Positions 18,015-27,288 of a DNA stretch of 35,725 nucleotides are shown here, piece after piece. This DNA comes from Pelomyxa schiedti (taxonomy: Eukaryota > Protista > Evosea), in contig JAHLWZ010000453.1 of the NCBI GenBank assembly GCA_020536535.1, positions 1 to 35,725 on the forward strand, read 5' to 3'. How positions within the stretch are numbered: the first letter of the stretch is position 1; the number at the start of each line of letters is the position of its first letter. The position numbers were made by a program, and so were the translations under genes. The notes under the pieces are model-generated. The model did no database searches and was not told the DNA's origin. It saw only the letters and a program-made list of their open reading frames with translations.

Positions 18015-21516
<3,502 letters not shown>

Positions 21517-21740: not shown

Positions 21741-22028
21741 ATGTCGGTGAACGGTGGGGAGCGCAGAGGACTAATGTCAGTTCTTCTCTTTGTTTCTCGT
21801 GCACTGGTTGGGTAGTGACATCTTATATTGTTTTCCCTCGTAGGAGTGGGGATCACAACGATGGAGAGAGCAAGCAGTGGCACACCAACGTGATGTTGTG
21901 CTCAGCAGCGACGGTGGTCGTAGGGACCATCGCTGCCGTCTTCGCCGCGGTTTCTTTCGCCTACGTCTTTCAGATCTGGAGCACTGTGGAAACTCCAACA
22001 GAAGTAATTAATTACTCTTCGTTTTATG

Positions 22029-22065
<37 letters not shown>

Positions 22066-25000
22066 CACATTGTGGCCATAGACGACTGTTATTTCCACTT
22101 ACACTGACACAGTGATCAACTACGTCACGAGCAACAACCTTGTTTCAGTCCAACAGTTGCTCTCAATGGGTGCAGACCCTAATTCTCGCAATCCCTCTGG
22201 GATGACTCTTCTAATGATAGCAGCCGGGAGGGGCTACATGCAAATGGTTACTGGCTTCCCTCTGCGTTCCTTCATGCTTAATCCGGGAAAACCAGGTTGA
22301 TCTGTTGCTAAATGCTGGTGCTGACCCCACATGGCTGGATTCGAGAATGGGAACCACTGCCCTGCACATGGCTTGTCAAGGTATTGAGTTGAGAACATGT
22401 TCTATGCCCATTTCCACTTTTTTTGATTAGGAGGAAACCCAGATATTGTTACTATGCTGGCTGAACACGGAGCATTTTTGGACCTTCAGGCTGCCAGAAA
22501 TGGTAATTATGGCACTTCAAAGGAATGACAGTAACAAAAAAAAAGGGCACACAGCACTGATGGACGCAGTGTGGTATTAACACAATTTCTTTTCTGTTGC
22601 AGCTGTACACGGTAACCACTCATTCCACCAATTTAGGTACAAAAACCCAGATGCCGTGCAGCGGCTTGTCGATTTGGGTGCCAATATGTACCTGTATTCA
22701 CACTATGGCAAAAATGCAACTATGTTCATTGAGACAGGCAAGTCCGCAAAAGATCAAAATCTCTATGACAAGATACAACTTATTTTGGAGTATGTCACAC
22801 CCTTCCGTTTTCTTGTAATGATCTTTTTTATATTATTCTCCAACAAATGCCAGCAATTACGCTAAATCCATTGATGAGACTATTTCCAATCAACTCCTGT
22901 TTAATGCAGTACTTGCCCATGATATTGATACTGTCAGAGAGTTACTTTCTACGGGTTACACAAATATTGATGAAAGAAGACCAAATACAATGACCCCAGA
23001 AGATGGCTATACACCGTATGACAACAAGTCCTTGTCATCGATGTGATCTTTTTCTTTTTTGGCTTCAGACTCCTTTTAGCGGCCCGAGATGGGGAAACAG
23101 AAATTGTGGAAGTATTATTGGAGTATGGAGCTGATATCACTGCAGTGGACTATTTCATGAAGGTGTGACTTTTTTCTTTTATTGTCTCGTTCTCAAGAAC
23201 ATTTTACATCACTCAGGCAACAGCAGGCCATAAATGCGCATACAATGGATTCCCTGACACCTGTCAATCCTTGATAGATAATGGGGGTCTTGAAATTGAT
23301 GCCCAAGGGCCAGTTAATGGAAAAACGGTAAATATGTAGCTGAACACTATTCAACTAGTTATTGCTTTGTGGTAAATACGCTGAACACAATAAAGGCTTT
23401 GCATGATGCTATTTGGCATGGACACAGTGAAGCCGCCTCTGTTTTGATAAATGGTGGTGCACGCACCGACCTCTTCTCCTGGGATGGTCTGTCTGTTTAT
23501 CAAGTTAAATCACTTTCCACTGCATCAAATAACATCTCCCAAATCAGGAAGCAAAGAAGTTCTGGTACTATGATATTATGGACCTCGTTAATGGTGTTAA
23601 CTGTTACGAATCTCATCAAACATTCACTTTCCCCCAGACACAGAGTACATACCTCCATCAGACTCCTTCATAGGAAAAGTTCTGGGAAACGATCTCGTTG
23701 CTGTACAAATATTACTGCAGCAAGGTGAATGGTTTTGTGTAGTGTAAATCTGAATTTCCCGTAGGTCAGGATGTAAACCAGAAAGACAGTAATGGAATGG
23801 TACCACTCGCGAATATTAATCCTATATTAAGAGAGTTCTTTTAAGACAGGTCTGCACTATGCATCTGGTCGATGCTTTGCCCAAATGGTAGATCTTTTAC
23901 TCAACTCTGGGGCAAGTCCCGTTCTTCTAGACTCCGAAATGGGGACCAGTGCTTTGCACCTTGCTGCTCAGGGTACTTGCTACTTCCGGTAGGTTGTTGC
24001 TTTGTGCTGATAAACGGGTTGGAAAAAACCCAAAAAGGGGGATGTGTTGATGTTGCATCTCTTCTCCTGGAGCATGGTGCTTTTCTCGACTTGAACAATG
24101 CGTTTGCGGTATGGGTTTTTTGTCCCACTATTTGCCAACACATTCAAAGGGACATACACCATTGCAAGAGGCAGTATGGTACAAGAACCCTACTGTTTCA
24201 ACGTGAGTTGCTAAATTTTTTTTCGTCATTTAATGTTGTTTTTGACGCGATAAAAAGGCTCCTTATGGAAAGTGGAGCAAATTTAGCCATCCAAAACCAC
24301 TATGGAAATACGGTGGATGACTTCTTAGATGACTCCCCTGTTTCCACAATGGATGTTGTAATCAACAATGCAACTTCTCTTGGTATGTTGAATTCCGGCA
24401 TGTGCTAATGCAGATTAACGAACCAATCAGCTCTGGAAAACCGCATACAAGAGATAGAAGATATACTTGACTCACAACAGCTGAACGCAGCAACGATGGC
24501 GGACAACCTGACTGCCGTCAATCTTCTGTTGGCTGCTGGTTACACAGATCTTAACGAACGACGCCCTAACATTGGTGTAAGATGGGATGGCTATACCCCG
24601 TATGAAAACTAGTTCCTTTCTGGTTTCCTCACCGAGTACCAATCAGATTGCTGCTGGCAGCTATAAATGGATATTCCGATATCTTTTCGAAAATACTTCA
24701 CCACATTGAATGAATTGTTTTTCCATGACTCCAATTACACATCGTTCTTGCATTATTGCAGGCAGGTGCAGATATAAAAGTTGTGGACTACTACATGAAG
24801 TCGACTGTAGCCCACAAGTGTGGGTATGGAGGCTTCCCAGACGTATGCAGAATCATTGTAAATTGGGGAGGTCTGGAATTGAACGCTCAAGGGCCAATAA
24901 ATGGCTACACTGTGTGTACTCCCTCTCGTTCCCTCCGTATTTCCTTTGTTCGGAGTATACACTATACTAAAACGTTACGGCTTTGAAGACCTACATTCTG

Positions 25001-25790
25001 ATGTCTCATTTTCTCCTTGATGTAGGCACTACATGATTCGATATGGCATGGTCATACAGAAACAGCCACGGTTTTAGTAGAAGCAGGTCTCTTATTACCG
25101 TCGCAAATGACACAAGTTCAGCACAAGCTTCTAACATCCTTGTAGGCGCCAAGACGAACCTTGTGGCCTGGGATGGACTTGTCCCCCTAACAGGTCCCTT
25201 TCCTTTCTCCCTCTGCCTTAGACAAACTGCACTCTACAACAGAATCCCAAAAATACGGCTTTGAGGATGTTGAAGATCTTCTTGACAATGCAACTGATCC
25301 CTCCAACAACGTATATCCCTCAAATAAATAATAGCGGGGCCGTTTTCACGATGCTTTCAAGATATCACCAGACATTGATGGCATTGTCAGAGTCATGAAC
25401 GTTTTTGGAGTTATTCCTGGTAAAATGGGTGACATGGAAAGGTTGAATGATTACCCGGTAATAAAATATCAACTCACCACGTGACACATTTCCAGTCTCG
25501 TTTCATCATATGCCCCCAATGTGCGGACTGAACAAGGCTGTTTGCTTTTCGACTTTGTCACGGCCCAAACCCCACCCGGTTCTGGGTTTCCGGCAACCAT
25601 GTACCTGTATGAGAAGTGGCAGACCCAAGCCGATTTGGAGACACACGTTGCACTCCAAGTAACAATGAACCCTTATGTTTATGTGACTGTCTTCTAACTG
25701 TCCTCAAAGAGCACCCAAGACTTCACCAATTCAATGCAGCAATTGCTTGTCTCTAGCAGCACCCAATATTGCAACGATGTATCGCTGTGA
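21741..25790 (+). CDS. Signal-anchored protein with two tandem ankyrin-repeat modules and a C-terminal ABM (antibiotic-biosynthesis-monooxygenase/YgiN/LsrG-like) domain; ~26 introns, start codon uncertain (21741 or 21893)
   Basis: TM segment AATVVVGTIAAVFAAVSFAYVF. Ankyrin repeats: GMTLLMIAAGRGY..MVDLLLNAGAD, MGTTALHMACQGG, GHTALMDAVWYK, GYTPLLLAARDG, GKTALHDAIWHGH, all repeated in a second module. ABM: IVRVMNVFGVIPGKMGDMESLVSSYAPNVRTEQGCLLFDFV...MYLYEKWQTQADLETHVALQSTQDF. The fusion needs a 24-nt intron at 25311-25334. Confidence 0.82.
24679..24738 (+). other. AT-AC (U12-type) spliceosomal intron, 60 nt
   Basis: 5' end ATATCTTTT, branch-like TTTTTCCATGAC ~10 nt from the 3' end, terminal AC. 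Removal gives GYSD|IVLALLQAGADIKVVDYYMK, gap-free with module 1 GETEIVEVLLEYGADITAVDYFMK. There is no GT before the in-frame TGA. Confidence 0.85.
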
Positions 25791-25833
25791 CCCCTTTACC
25801 AACAAAAATTTATTTTCCCATTTCTCGTTAACG

Positions 25834-27288
25834 ATGATCCAAGTGACAGAGATGCTGCGCGCTGGCGAGCAGCTGGCGGCGTTGGCACTAGCTATCTACC
25901 GCCGGTCGCAACAGGTAGTAGCACTCGTAAGCAGCAGCAGCAGCAACACCAAAAACGAGGGACCACCGAGCGCCAAGAGACCCAGGACGTCGGCTACGAC
26001 AACTACGGCCAGCGGCGCCGCTGCTGCCGAGGCCTCGCGAGCGCCGCAGCCACAGCTTGTGCTGCGGCACCCTCCCGTGAGCATGCTGCCGATGAGCGTG
26101 CTGCGATACAGCGTCGGGGACCCGTGGGTGCTGCGGCACGAGAGGCTTGTGGCCGTGTCGGTGCTGGCGGGGCCCGCGGACAACTACGAGTGGGCGTGGG
26201 TCGCGCTTGGGGTGTCCGGGACGCTGGGCGTCACTGTGGGACCCAGCGTGCTGGCTAGGGAAAGATGGGGATGTGGGCCCCGCGTCTGCGGTTTCCTCCA
26301 AGGCGAGTCCCAGTGTGTGGCGCTGTTCGAGGGCCTGCTGCAAACTGATTCGGGGCTTTACTGCTCTGGTCTCTGCGCCGCTGCGTGTTCCTCTGTTGAG
26401 GGTAATGGGAGGAGTGTGTCGGAATCACAGATACTTGTGGCTGACAGGTCCACAATCTTAACGAGAGAGTCGGATGAGGGAGTATTTCGGTGTTGCTGCA
26501 ACGGCATGTGGGTGGTGGCCCTTGTGGGTGGGCCTTGTCCACCCGGGGACACAATGAGGCTGTGGAAGCTGAGTGGCTCTCTCCCCACAAAACAACAAGC
26601 GCACGACATCAGGCTCCCAGACCATTATCTCTCCAGTTGCAAGGAAACCTTTGTGCTGAAATTCTCTGATACGCAGCTTGCCTCGGGTGCTATCCAGCAA
26701 CAAAATGAACTCTGCTGGTTGAGGCTTTTGGGCAGTAAGTTGAGAGTTGATATCATTGACCTTCAGCGATCATTCACCAGTGGGCACCTAGTAGTGGTTA
26801 CAAGTTCAGAGTTCTATTATTCAATGCAGGCAATAATCTGGCCCCCCTTAATTACAACCAATCAAGGGAGATTGTACGCTCTCTTAAAAAAGATACAAGC
26901 ACCACCCTGTGAGAGGTATTCTGAAGTTCTGGATGCCTTTTCTGGTTCCAAGCTGCCCTTCAGTGGCACCATAATCTCCACAGCTGATGATAAAGGCCAC
27001 GTTGTCATGCAGAGGAAGAACACCCCCGACTCGTATGAAATTGTGGACATTGCACACCCAGAACGTGGGACTCGGCACGCGTGGCGCTTTCCTGACCACT
27101 TTTTCAAATTCCAAGATGCAGGGTTGCTTTCTACCTGTCCCCAGGACAACGGACACAGAAACACAGTCAAGATATGGGACACACTCACTGGCTTCTTAAT
27201 CATTTCGTTCTCCGTCCCATCCAGACAAAACACCTCAGTACACTCTTTCATTTCCGTTCACAAGGTGGGTTCAAAACAAAACACCTGA
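25834..27288 (+). CDS. Intronless hypothetical protein (~484 aa), function unknown
   Basis: Long open frame (ORF track 25747-27288). The first ATG past the upstream gene's stop is at 25834 (an ATG at 25777 overlaps that gene's end). The 5' half is GC-rich and the C-terminal half is beta-strand rich (TVKIWDTLTGFLIISF). No family was confidently recognised. Confidence 0.7.
   Translation: MIQVTEMLRAGEQLAALALAIYRRSQQVVALVSSSSSNTKNEGPPSAKRPRTSATTTTASGAAAAEASRAPQPQLVLRHPPVSMLPMSVLRYSVGDPWVLRHERLVAVSVLAGPADNYEWAWVALGVSGTLGVTVGPSVLARERWGCGPRVCGFLQGESQCVALFEGLLQTDSGLYCSGLCAAACSSVEGNGRSVSESQILVADRSTILTRESDEGVFRCCCNGMWVVALVGGPCPPGDTMRLWKLSGSLPTKQQAHDIRLPDHYLSSCKETFVLKFSDTQLASGAIQQQNELCWLRLLGSKLRVDIIDLQRSFTSGHLVVVTSSEFYYSMQAIIWPPLITTNQGRLYALLKKIQAPPCERYSEVLDAFSGSKLPFSGTIISTADDKGHVVMQRKNTPDSYEIVDIAHPERGTRHAWRFPDHFFKFQDAGLLSTCPQDNGHRNTVKIWDTLTGFLIISFSVPSRQNTSVHSFISVHKVGSKQNT

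What the first reader, a model, noticed from the sequence alone, without database searches (positions are those of the whole stretch)
21741..25790. Signal-anchored double ankyrin module fused to an ABM monooxygenase-like domain: candidate new system, possibly of bacterial origin
Seen: an N-terminal TM helix, a Thr-rich stalk, two ~330-aa paralogous ankyrin modules, several N-x-S/T sequons (NAT, NYT, NLT), then an ABM/dimeric alpha-beta-barrel signature (VFGVIPGK...RTEQGCLLFDF...YLYEKWQTQADLETH). Established: ABM/YgiN/LsrG proteins are cofactor-free enzymes acting on quinols, polyketides or the AI-2 signal, and are mostly bacterial. Inference from recall: module motifs such as D.RMG..ALH.A.QGG, GAF.DL....GHT.L.DAVW and E..AQG..NG.TALHD..WHGH resemble a bacterial ankyrin family. 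This suggests horizontal transfer, internal duplication, heavy intronisation (~26 introns) and relocation to the secretory lumen or cell surface, e.g. for modifying bacterial metabolites or handling oxygen/quinols.
Basis: partly seen in the sequence, partly recalled or inferred. Interest (0 to 1): 0.78.

Follow-up and report, generated by a model that had tools for sequence, protein, structure and literature searches.

The report
Amoeba gene from bacterial ankyrin family
The anaerobic amoeba Pelomyxa schiedti expresses one membrane-anchored protein made of two copies of an ankyrin module that is otherwise known here only from bacteria, joined to a small enzyme-like (ABM) domain. The public annotation wrongly splits it into two genes, and its function is untested.

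Summary
Window 21741-25790 (+) is one gene of Pelomyxa schiedti (contig JAHLWZ010000453.1) with 26-27 exons and about 835-863 residues.

- **Layout:** one N-terminal hydrophobic anchor, a short Thr-rich stretch, two 335-residue ankyrin modules (50% identical to each other) and a C-terminal ABM domain.
- **Transcript:** RNA contigs confirm 17 introns, including the one that removes the in-frame TAA near 25330. Ankyrin and ABM are therefore on one transcript.
- **Annotation error:** GenBank splits the gene in two (650 aa and 205 aa) at an AT-AC (U12-type) intron, 24679-24738. The RNA contig splices that intron out.
- **Ankyrin origin:** each module aligns end to end (42-48% identity, E about 1e-90) with a whole 330-360-residue bacterial 8-repeat ankyrin protein. 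That family turned up in at least 425 bacterial genome stretches across many phyla. The two modules are sisters (100/100) and lie among bacterial rows.
- **Bacterial partners:** the bacterial proteins are often fused or adjacent to DJ-1/PfpI, epoxide hydrolase, SnoaL/NTF2-like and ChrR-cupin enzymes. No bacterial ankyrin-ABM fusion was seen.
- **ABM domain:** confirmed by Pfam (35 bits) and by fold (pLDDT 90, TM 0.72-0.80), but it has no close relatives.

Transfer from bacteria, duplication and intron gain are supported. Lumenal or surface exposure and any enzymatic role remain untested.

The parts
21741..25790 (+). Whole gene: 26 exons from ATG 21893 (835 aa), or 27 exons from ATG 21741 (about 863 aa); stop codon at 25788-25790
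   Evidence: Gene model built. GenBank models A (21741-24713) and B (24795-25790) are listed. RNA contig X1 runs spliced from 23215 to the 3' end.
21741..21892 (+). Optional 5' coding part as implied by the GenBank model's length: exon 21741-21775, 68-nt intron 21776-21843, then 21844-21892. It adds 28 residues before the hydrophobic segment.
   Evidence: Reconstructed from the GenBank product length of 650 aa and the sequence. There is no RNA cover here, so it is unverified.
21896..21976 (+). Single hydrophobic segment of about 27 residues: membrane anchor or signal anchor
   Evidence: It is the only stretch with 19-residue hydropathy above 1.6 in the whole model.
21977..22120 (+). Short Thr-rich juxtamembrane stretch (8 Thr in 22 residues), interrupted by intron 22004-22081, which holds a long T-run
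22103..23639 (+). Ankyrin module 1 (residues 45-380 counted from M21893; about 8 repeats as 4 + linker + 4), with 10 predicted introns
   Evidence: Pfam Ank hit on exon 2. 47.6% identity over 332 residues to bacterial P0022, E 1.6e-95. Only its last part, from 23215, is covered by RNA.
23658..25292 (+). Ankyrin module 2 (residues 386-722), with 11 introns, all RNA-supported
   Evidence: Pfam Ank hit on exon 14. 46-48% identity over about 330 residues to P0022 and L015. Joints listed.
24679..24738 (+). AT-AC (U12-type) intron, starting ATATCTTT and ending AC, with TCCATGAC about 10 nt before the 3' end. The GenBank annotation breaks the gene at this point.
   Evidence: Contig X1 record positions 958-989 lie on 24647-24678 and position 990 lies on 24739. 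Sequence. GenBank model A ends at 24713, inside the intron.
25311..25361 (+). GT-AG intron that removes the in-frame TAA near 25330 and joins the ankyrin part to the ABM part
   Evidence: Joint 25310 to 25362 is present in contigs of both RNA runs X1 and X2.
25362..25787 (+). Linker plus ABM domain (ferredoxin-like, strand-helix-strand-strand-helix-helix-strand), in three exons: 25362-25441, 25496-25658 and 25710-25790
   Evidence: Pfam PF03992 35.2 bits, E 1.5e-8, profile positions 2-75 of 78. AlphaFold model pLDDT 90.2. Foldseek top PDB matches are all ABM proteins, TM 0.72-0.80. All 30 nearest ESM Atlas models are ABM.

Best explanation
This is one nuclear gene of Pelomyxa schiedti. It encodes a single-pass, N-terminally anchored protein of about 835-863 residues.

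Shown here:
- The body is two tandem copies of an 8-repeat ankyrin module. Each copy is homologous along its full length to a complete protein of a widespread bacterial ankyrin family.
- A C-terminal ABM (dimeric alpha-beta-barrel) domain follows.
- One spliced transcript joins the last part of module 1 (from 23215), all of module 2 and the ABM domain.

Inferred history:
- An ancestor of Pelomyxa acquired a bacterial ankyrin gene.
- At least three introns entered it, because they are shared in position and phase by both modules.
- The module then duplicated in tandem, and more introns were gained, including a U12-type one.
- An anchor exon and an ABM domain were attached at some point. The order of these two events is unknown.

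Inferred mechanism:
- The ABM domain, which works as a homodimer in the solved family members, pairs two chains at the membrane.
- It binds or converts a small aromatic or quinone-like or other reactive compound without a cofactor.
- The ankyrin modules act as protein-binding platforms.
- This mirrors the bacterial relatives, where the same ankyrin module is repeatedly fused or adjacent to small detoxifying or tailoring enzymes: DJ-1/PfpI, epoxide hydrolase, SnoaL/NTF2-like, ChrR-type cupin and quinone-reductase-like proteins.

Which side of the membrane the body faces is not settled.
For: One gene, expressed:
- Spliced RNA contigs from two single-cell RNA runs confirm 17 introns. These include 25311-25361 (ankyrin to ABM) and the AT-AC intron 24679-24738, which bridges the two GenBank models.
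- The database protein P0001 (KAH3762475.1) equals my splice model of the last 205 residues.

Eukaryotic gene, not contamination:
- It has introns, and its neighbours are a Polo-box kinase, WD40 proteins, Arf and Rad52.

Bacterial family:
- P0001 residues 1-98 hit a Sphingobacterium protein at 51% identity.
- The modules are 42-48% identical over about 330 residues to family members, E 1e-85 to 1e-99. A generic ankyrin control gives 25% identity and 55 bits.
- 425 bacterial genome stretches encode relatives, across Cyanobacteriota, Actinomycetota, Pseudomonadota, Bacteroidota, Planctomycetota, Chloroflexota, Bacillota and other phyla.

Duplication after divergence from the sampled bacteria:
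- The modules are sisters at 99 (quick tree) and 100/100 (careful tree). They sit inside a 95/90-supported group of 21 rows that are otherwise bacterial.

Intron history:
- Three intron positions are identical in place and phase between the modules, two more are offset by 1 nt, and the rest are module-specific.

ABM domain:
-.

Partner-enzyme theme in bacteria:
- 23 of 80 loci carry extensions of at least 80 residues. Those I scanned are DJ-1/PfpI, SnoaL_2/LEH or EHN plus alpha/beta hydrolase; four C-terminal ones gave no clear Pfam hit.
- Among 121 neighbour ORFs of 37 non-redundant loci: alpha/beta hydrolase 13, DJ-1 6, Cupin_7 6, EHN 4, Zn-ADH 4, SnoaL_2 3, EthD 2. Single loci are shown.
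Against: - No RNA covers 21741-23214, so the start codon, the anchor exon and their link to module 1 are model-based.
- No bacterial or other eukaryotic ankyrin-ABM fusion was found.
- The ABM domain has no close relative, so its origin and its substrate cannot be inferred.
- ABM domains have very diverse activities, and some may only bind ligands.
- Pelomyxa is an anaerobe, which argues against a strictly O2-dependent monooxygenase role.
- The tree is unrooted, and other eukaryotes were not searched with a full module, so the direction of transfer rests mainly on taxonomic breadth.
- The neighbourhood counts have no background control.
Confidence: 0.55

Rival explanations
1. Lumenal or surface version. 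The hydrophobic segment is a type II signal anchor, so the ankyrin modules and the ABM domain face the ER or vesicle lumen, a phagosome or symbiont vacuole, or the cell surface. There they would act on bacterial or environmental metabolites.
For: - The segment is long and is followed by a Thr-rich, acidic stretch with no positive charge, while the optional N-terminal tail holds R, R and K.
- Some bacterial relatives are secreted and sit beside secreted enzymes: Sphingobacterium, Formosa, P0022, P0025 and P0028.
- P. schiedti houses prokaryotic endosymbionts (PMC10579272 abstract).
Against: - Net charge within 15 residues of either side of the segment is about equal.
- The count of N-x-S/T sequons is at chance level: 6 observed against 6.8 expected.
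- Only about 11 of 120 bacterial members have a signal peptide, and the rows nearest to Pelomyxa lack one.
- From general knowledge, eukaryotic ankyrin domains are nearly always cytoplasmic.
Confidence: 0.4
2. Cytosol-facing version. The N-terminal segment tethers the protein to the ER, the plasma membrane or an organelle outer membrane, with the ankyrin modules and the ABM domain in the cytosol, as a membrane-bound scaffold.
For: - Most bacterial relatives, including the nearest ones, are cytoplasmic.
- P. schiedti has many other cytosolic-type ankyrin-enzyme fusion genes according to earlier scan notes (unchecked).
- The long hydrophobic segment is compatible with an N-out anchor.
Against: - The Thr-rich acidic stalk after the segment is typical of exoplasmic juxtamembrane regions.
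- No positive residue follows the segment.
Confidence: 0.4
3. Two separate genes, as annotated in GenBank: a 650-residue ankyrin protein and a 205-residue ankyrin-ABM protein.
For: - This is the GenBank annotation.
- One 221-nt contig of run X2 (24682-24902) runs unspliced through most of the AT-AC intron.
Against: - Contig X1 (1658 nt, depth 18.9) is continuous and in frame across 24678/24739 and on to the stop.
- Model A ends at a stop inside an intron that has U12 consensus ends.
- Model B starts inside an ankyrin repeat, at the DYYMK motif that is internal to the module in module 1 and in the bacterial family.
Confidence: 0.04
4. The family is eukaryotic or ancient in origin, and the bacterial copies derive from eukaryotes. 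This is the usual assumption for bacterial ankyrins. Pelomyxa would then have inherited its copy vertically.
For: - The tree is unrooted, so rooting on the Pelomyxa stem is formally possible.
- Other eukaryotes were not searched with a full module.
Against: - At least 425 bacterial genome stretches in a dozen or more phyla carry the family, mostly free-living organisms, and the genes sit in operon-like clusters.
- No named eukaryote appears among the 120 best family hits.
- No close relative was found in JGI metagenomes.
- The Pelomyxa pair sits inside a 95/90-supported subgroup.
Confidence: 0.06

Closest known systems
Uncharacterised bacterial 8-repeat ankyrin family (for example Sphingobacterium siyangense P0008, Formosa agariphila P0016, and Nostoc or Dolichospermum fusion proteins)
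   Same: - Full-length colinear homology of each Pelomyxa module: 42-51% identity, the same 4 + linker helix + 4 repeat plan, and the same atypical motifs (LDxRMG..ALH, GAF.D...GHT.L.DAVW, ELDAQGPYNGYTALHDAVWHGH).
- The same habit of carrying one small enzyme-like domain at one end.
   Different: - Pelomyxa has two modules in tandem, 25-26 spliceosomal introns and a eukaryotic-style N-terminal anchor.
- Its partner domain is ABM. I did not see ABM fused to or beside the bacterial genes; those carry DJ-1/PfpI, SnoaL/NTF2-like or epoxide hydrolase.
ABM / dimeric alpha-beta-barrel proteins (Pfam PF03992; for example YgiN 1r6y, LsrG 3qmq, SnoaB 3kg1, Rv0793 1y0h, DR_2100 3e8o)
   Same: - Pfam match above threshold.
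- Predicted fold superposes at TM 0.72-0.80.
- The conserved P, G, F, E and H columns of the alignment are present.
   Different: - Only 13-21% identity to solved members, and no close sequence relative anywhere.
- It is a single domain at the end of a long membrane-anchored ankyrin protein, not a free protein of about 100 residues or a tandem pair.
- The host is an anaerobe.
- Activity is unknown.
Pseudomonas aeruginosa AnkB, a periplasmic ankyrin-like protein needed for full KatB catalase activity (recalled from Howell et al. 2000; not checked here)
   Same: It is an extracytoplasmic, membrane-tethered bacterial ankyrin protein that supports a stress-defence enzyme. This is a possible model for how an ankyrin module could work with a detoxifying enzyme.
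   Different: It is much shorter (about four repeats). No homology test was done here and no membership is claimed.
Other ankyrin-enzyme fusion genes of P. schiedti noted by this scan (for example ankyrin with a 2OG oxygenase)
   Same: The same genome shows the same tendency to join ankyrin arrays to enzyme domains.
   Different: Those notes report no bacterial-type ankyrin module. I did not check them.

Membership tests
ABM domain (PF03992, dimeric alpha-beta barrel) | Profile match above the curated threshold over most of the domain | tested here: met
   35.2 bits against a cut-off of 23.1, E 1.5e-8, profile positions 2-75 of 78. One exon alone scores 23.4 bits.
ABM domain (PF03992, dimeric alpha-beta barrel) | Ferredoxin-like strand-helix-strand-strand-helix-helix-strand fold that superposes on solved ABM proteins | tested here: met
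   AlphaFold model pLDDT 90.2. Foldseek top PDB hits are all ABM or Dabb-type proteins, E 1e-8 to 1e-5, TM 0.7-0.8. The nearest Atlas models are all ABM.
ABM domain (PF03992, dimeric alpha-beta barrel) | Homodimer barrel and cofactor-free catalysis | not testable with these tools
   This needs purified protein.
Bacterial 8-repeat ankyrin family (P0008/P0022/P0038 type) | End-to-end colinear similarity to a whole family member, well above generic ankyrin similarity | tested here: met
   42-48% identity over 320-335 residues, 245-287 bits. A generic ankyrin control (P0009) gives 25% identity and 53-58 bits.
Bacterial 8-repeat ankyrin family (P0008/P0022/P0038 type) | Branches among family members in a tree | tested here: met
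   The Pelomyxa pair (100/100) lies inside a 95/90-supported group of 21 rows. The tree is unrooted.
Gene transfer from bacteria to a eukaryote | The gene is truly in the eukaryotic genome (introns, eukaryotic neighbours, spliced RNA) | tested here: met
Gene transfer from bacteria to a eukaryote | The family is broad in bacteria and absent or rare in other eukaryotes | tested here: inconclusive
   Breadth in bacteria is shown. No named eukaryote is among the 120 best hits, and no close metagenomic relative was found. No search with a full Pelomyxa module against eukaryotic proteomes could be run.
Type II signal-anchored secretory-pathway protein | Single N-terminal hydrophobic segment | tested here: met
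Type II signal-anchored secretory-pathway protein | Orientation with the body outside the cytosol (charge bias, excess of glycosylation sites) | tested here: inconclusive
   Flanking charges are about equal. Sequons: 6 observed against 6.8 expected. No dedicated topology predictor was on hand.
U12-type (AT-AC) intron | AT-AC ends with an ATATCYTT 5' site and a TCCTTRAC-like branch site 10-15 nt from the 3' end, and removed in RNA | tested here: met
   Sequence. Contig X1 is continuous from 24678 to 24739.

The most novel reading that the evidence does not exclude
The protein sits in the membrane of phagosomes or of the vacuoles that hold Pelomyxa's bacterial and archaeal partners, with its body inside. 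A module taken from bacteria would hold a partner there, and the ABM domain would convert a prokaryote-derived quinol, signal or reactive compound. That would make it a host-side tool of the symbiosis built from a transferred bacterial part.
Probability: 0.07. Interest if true: 0.8.

Novelty: new variant of a known kind. Interest (0 to 1): 0.5.

Why it matters
- **Annotation.** The finding corrects a public annotation: two GenBank proteins are one gene, split by an unrecognised AT-AC intron. The genome paper lists no AT-AC introns, so other Pelomyxa genes may be broken in the same way.
- **Direction of transfer.** Bacterial ankyrins are usually assumed to come from eukaryotes. Here a large family of mostly free-living bacteria appears to have supplied a module to a eukaryote. 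The module then gained more than 20 introns and duplicated. Three intron positions are shared between the copies, which gives a relative order of intron gain and duplication.
- **The bacterial family itself.** It is present in hundreds of bacterial species and swaps partners among DJ-1/PfpI, epoxide hydrolase, SnoaL-like and cupin enzymes. My paper searches found no description of it, and it may be the more general lead.

Tried and rejected
- **Exhaustive 1.84-billion-protein search with the 54-residue ABM exon.** It returned the GenBank fragment plus three weak tandem-ABM proteins and three repeat-protein artefacts. It was useful only for giving a referable protein id.
- **Word search with the ABM domain.** Blank.
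- **PDB sequence search with the ABM exon.** Blank.
- **NCBIfam on exons.** Only noise.
- **ESM Atlas feature search.** The ABM part gave ABM clusters at sub-threshold scores. The whole fragment gave generic ankyrins.
- **JGI metagenome scan with the 205-residue fragment.** Four loci matched, on the ankyrin part only, at about 40% identity. There was no close relative and no ankyrin-ABM.
- **Narrow ABM profile against all ORFs of 80 bacterial loci.** No hit. The profile's sensitivity was not controlled, so this is a weak negative.
- **PDB profile search with the ankyrin family.** Only generic and designed ankyrins.
- **Paper searches.** Nothing relevant on ankyrin with ABM or on the bacterial family.
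- **Cys pair.** Both modules share a C-x8-C pair that I considered as a possible disulphide. I dropped this because the two positions are ordinary buried ankyrin core positions and no coordinates were available.
- **Peroxisomal signal.** I checked the C-terminus for one; the ending VSL is not canonical.
- **Left out, as the operators' note requires.** The joined 835-residue spliced model has no reference, so it was never typed or sent to any remote search or fold tool. Remote work used single exons by reference, the GenBank fragment P0001 and bacterial proxies. Exons were joined only inside local scripts, by coordinates, for frame checks, module comparison, local BLAST against fetched proteins and trees.
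Full report
**Source and setting**

The 54-residue ABM exon found a database protein identical to my splice model of the gene's end. That protein is KAH3762475.1, named 'ankyrin 2,3/unc44 [Pelomyxa schiedti]', on a contig of 35,725 nt in assembly GCA_020536535.1 (JAHLWZ010000453.1). The contig is therefore this whole window. Neighbouring called genes are eukaryotic: a kinase with a Polo box, WD40 proteins, Arf and Rad52. The genome paper reports 7.43 introns per gene and only GT-AG, GC-AG and one GT-GG boundary (PMC8887013).

**Gene structure**

Reading the sequence and laying public contigs on it gives one + strand gene.

- Two single-cell RNA runs of one study carry spliced contigs. One is 1,658 nt long and runs from 23215 to the 3' end.
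- Fifteen listed joints, plus two more that I derived from the record coordinates (24679-24738 and 24912-25025), give 17 RNA-supported introns.
- The remaining eight or nine introns, upstream of 23215, are predicted. They keep the frame open and give a gap-poor alignment to module 2 and to bacterial homologues.
- From ATG 21893 the model has 26 exons and 835 residues and ends at 25790.
- The length of the GenBank model implies an extra exon at 21741-21775 and a 68-nt intron, which add 28 residues. This part has no RNA cover.
- The cDNA contigs start at different internal points next to template-switch oligo sequence. I read these as truncated cDNAs, not as an internal promoter.

**The fusion is real and the annotation is split**

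- The joint 25310 to 25362 is present in both RNA runs. It removes the intron that holds the TAA near 25330, so ankyrin and ABM lie in one reading frame.
- GenBank has two models: 21741-24713 (650 aa) and 24795-25790 (205 aa).
- The break falls in intron 24679-24738. This intron begins ATATCTTT, ends AC, and has TCCATGAC about 10 nt from its end, so it is a U12-type AT-AC intron.
- Contig X1 passes from 24678 straight to 24739.
- A shallow 221-nt contig of run X2 retains most of this intron. That could be pre-mRNA or DNA in the library.

**Protein layout**

- There is one hydrophobic segment, residues 1-28 counted from M21893, and no other.
- A Thr-rich acidic stretch follows, with 8 Thr in 22 residues.
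- Two modules follow, at residues 45-380 and 386-722, with 166 of 335 positions identical. Pfam finds Ank repeats in single exons.
- Six N-x-S/T sequons occur, against 6.8 expected from shuffling. They say nothing about glycosylation.

**The ankyrin modules belong to a bacterial family**

- The ankyrin part of the GenBank fragment hit a 349-residue Sphingobacterium protein at 51% identity.
- Searching with that protein gave a large family of 330-360-residue proteins. Named sources include Bacteroidota, Cyanobacteria, Streptomyces, Deinococcus, Bordetella, Chloroflexota and others.
- In local BLAST each Pelomyxa module aligns end to end with whole family members at 42-48% identity and E 1e-85 to 1e-99. 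A generic ankyrin protein gives 25% identity and about 55 bits.
- A scan of one genome per bacterial and archaeal species, using two family motifs, found 425 stretches that encode relatives in many phyla.
- An AlphaFold model of the near relative P0038 (pLDDT 94) shows two ankyrin stacks joined by a 26-residue helix.

**Trees**

- In a 122-row quick tree and a 51-row careful tree the two modules are sisters (99, then 100/100) on a long stem.
- In the careful tree they lie inside a 95/90-supported group of 21 rows. The named rows of that group are from Cyanobacteriota, Actinomycetota, Acidobacteriota, Bacillota, Bacteroidota, Chloroflexota and other bacterial phyla, and several rows have no taxon label.
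- The duplication therefore followed the split from all sampled bacterial relatives.
- The trees are unrooted, and I could not search eukaryotic proteomes with a full module. The direction of transfer rests on breadth in bacteria against a single known eukaryotic host.

**Intron history**

- Three introns sit at the same place and phase in both modules: after ACQ, in GYTP, and before ALHD.
- Two more are offset by exactly one nucleotide. The others are specific to one module, including the AT-AC intron.
- Some introns therefore predate the duplication and many came later.

**What the bacterial relatives suggest**

- **Signal peptides.** About 11 of 120 family members have N-terminal signal peptides. 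In Sphingobacterium and Formosa the neighbouring genes are also secreted. The rows nearest to Pelomyxa lack signal peptides.
- **Fusions.** 23 of 80 loci carry extra domains in the same ORF. I scanned ten of these extensions:
  - DJ-1/PfpI at either end;
  - SnoaL_2/LEH at the N-terminus;
  - epoxide hydrolase N-domain plus alpha/beta hydrolase at the C-terminus;
  - four C-terminal extensions of about 135 residues with no clear Pfam hit, of the same kind as the weakly SnoaL_4-like extension of P0028.
- **Neighbours.** Among 121 neighbour ORFs of 37 non-redundant loci the commonest families are alpha/beta hydrolases (13), DJ-1/PfpI (6), ChrR-type cupin (6), EHN (4), zinc ADH (4), SnoaL_2 (3) and EthD (2; I recall it as belonging to the same Pfam clan as ABM, not checked here). 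Single loci also show Flavodoxin_2, glyoxalase and nitroreductase.
- **Limits.** No background control was run, and ABM itself was not seen fused or adjacent.
- **My reading.** The ankyrin module habitually works with one small detoxifying or tailoring enzyme. In Pelomyxa that partner is an ABM domain. This is an inference.

**The ABM domain**

- The whole domain scores 35.2 bits against PF03992.
- A model built with six distant ABM halves has pLDDT 90.2 and the expected strand-helix-strand-strand-helix-helix-strand order.
- Its best PDB matches are ABM proteins: DR_2100, Rv0793, PA3566, YgiN, LsrG and SnoaB, at TM 0.72-0.80. All nearest Atlas models are ABM.
- It has no close sequence relative, so neither its source nor its substrate can be named.
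- It is a single domain and solved ABM proteins are dimers, so I expect it to pair two chains. This is untested.

**Topology**

Net charge within 15 residues on either side of the hydrophobic segment is about equal. The Thr-rich acidic stalk favours an exoplasmic body. The cytoplasmic nature of most relatives, and of eukaryotic ankyrins in general, favours a cytosolic body. I rate the two about equally.

**Verdict**

- Transfer from bacteria, tandem duplication and heavy intron gain are well supported.
- The 'new system' claim, the secretory relocation and the proposed substrates are not supported by any test I could run.
- This is a new variant of known kinds (a transferred gene and a domain fusion), with a corrected gene model and a lead to an undescribed bacterial ankyrin family.

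**Limits of method**

It was built only inside local scripts, by coordinates.

Noticed in passing
window 24679-24738: An AT-AC U12-type intron is spliced in RNA, and gene prediction failed at this point. The genome paper lists only GT-AG, GC-AG and one GT-GG boundary, so minor-class introns seem to be unannotated in this assembly and may split other genes.
   Followed up: partly
window 24682-24902: A shallow 221-nt contig of RNA run X2 runs unspliced through most of the AT-AC intron. It may be retained pre-mRNA (slow U12 splicing) or DNA in the library.
   Followed up: no
window 22503-22545 vs 24109-24149, and 23504-23547 vs 25194-25242: Two intron pairs in the duplicated modules sit at homologous sites but are offset by exactly one nucleotide (phase 1 vs 0, and phase 0 vs 1). 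This could be one-base intron sliding or independent insertion at the same proto-splice site.
   Followed up: partly
window 22020-22071: A T-run of about 50 nt lies inside the first confirmed-frame intron. The DNA contigs of run X3 break there, so its exact length may be uncertain in the assembly.
   Followed up: no
window 25777-27285 (+): An intronless open frame of 503 residues starts 11 nt before the stop of the ankyrin-ABM gene, in a GC-richer stretch. It has no called gene in GenBank and no Pfam match. RNA contigs reach at least 25800.
   Followed up: partly
L011, L013, L066, L035, L069, L070, L042 and other bacterial loci: The bacterial 8-repeat ankyrin family is fused in one ORF to DJ-1/PfpI (Nostocales, Dolichospermum, Dulcicalothrix), to epoxide hydrolase (Micromonospora, Streptosporangium) or to SnoaL_2 (Chlorogloeopsis). 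A conserved ChrR-type cupin of about 180 residues lies next to it in several phyla (L010, L011, L014, L026, L030, L040).
   Followed up: partly
tree: The bacterial family tree does not follow phylum boundaries. For example, Vulcanimicrobiota and Synergistota bins carry nearly identical copies, and a cyanobacterial row is sister to an actinomycete row. This suggests frequent transfer among bacteria, or mis-binned contigs.
   Followed up: no
window 18015-21516: The upstream gene is a kinase with a Polo box. Its last exon encodes a long Gln/Pro-rich tail (ORF 20851-21516).
   Followed up: no
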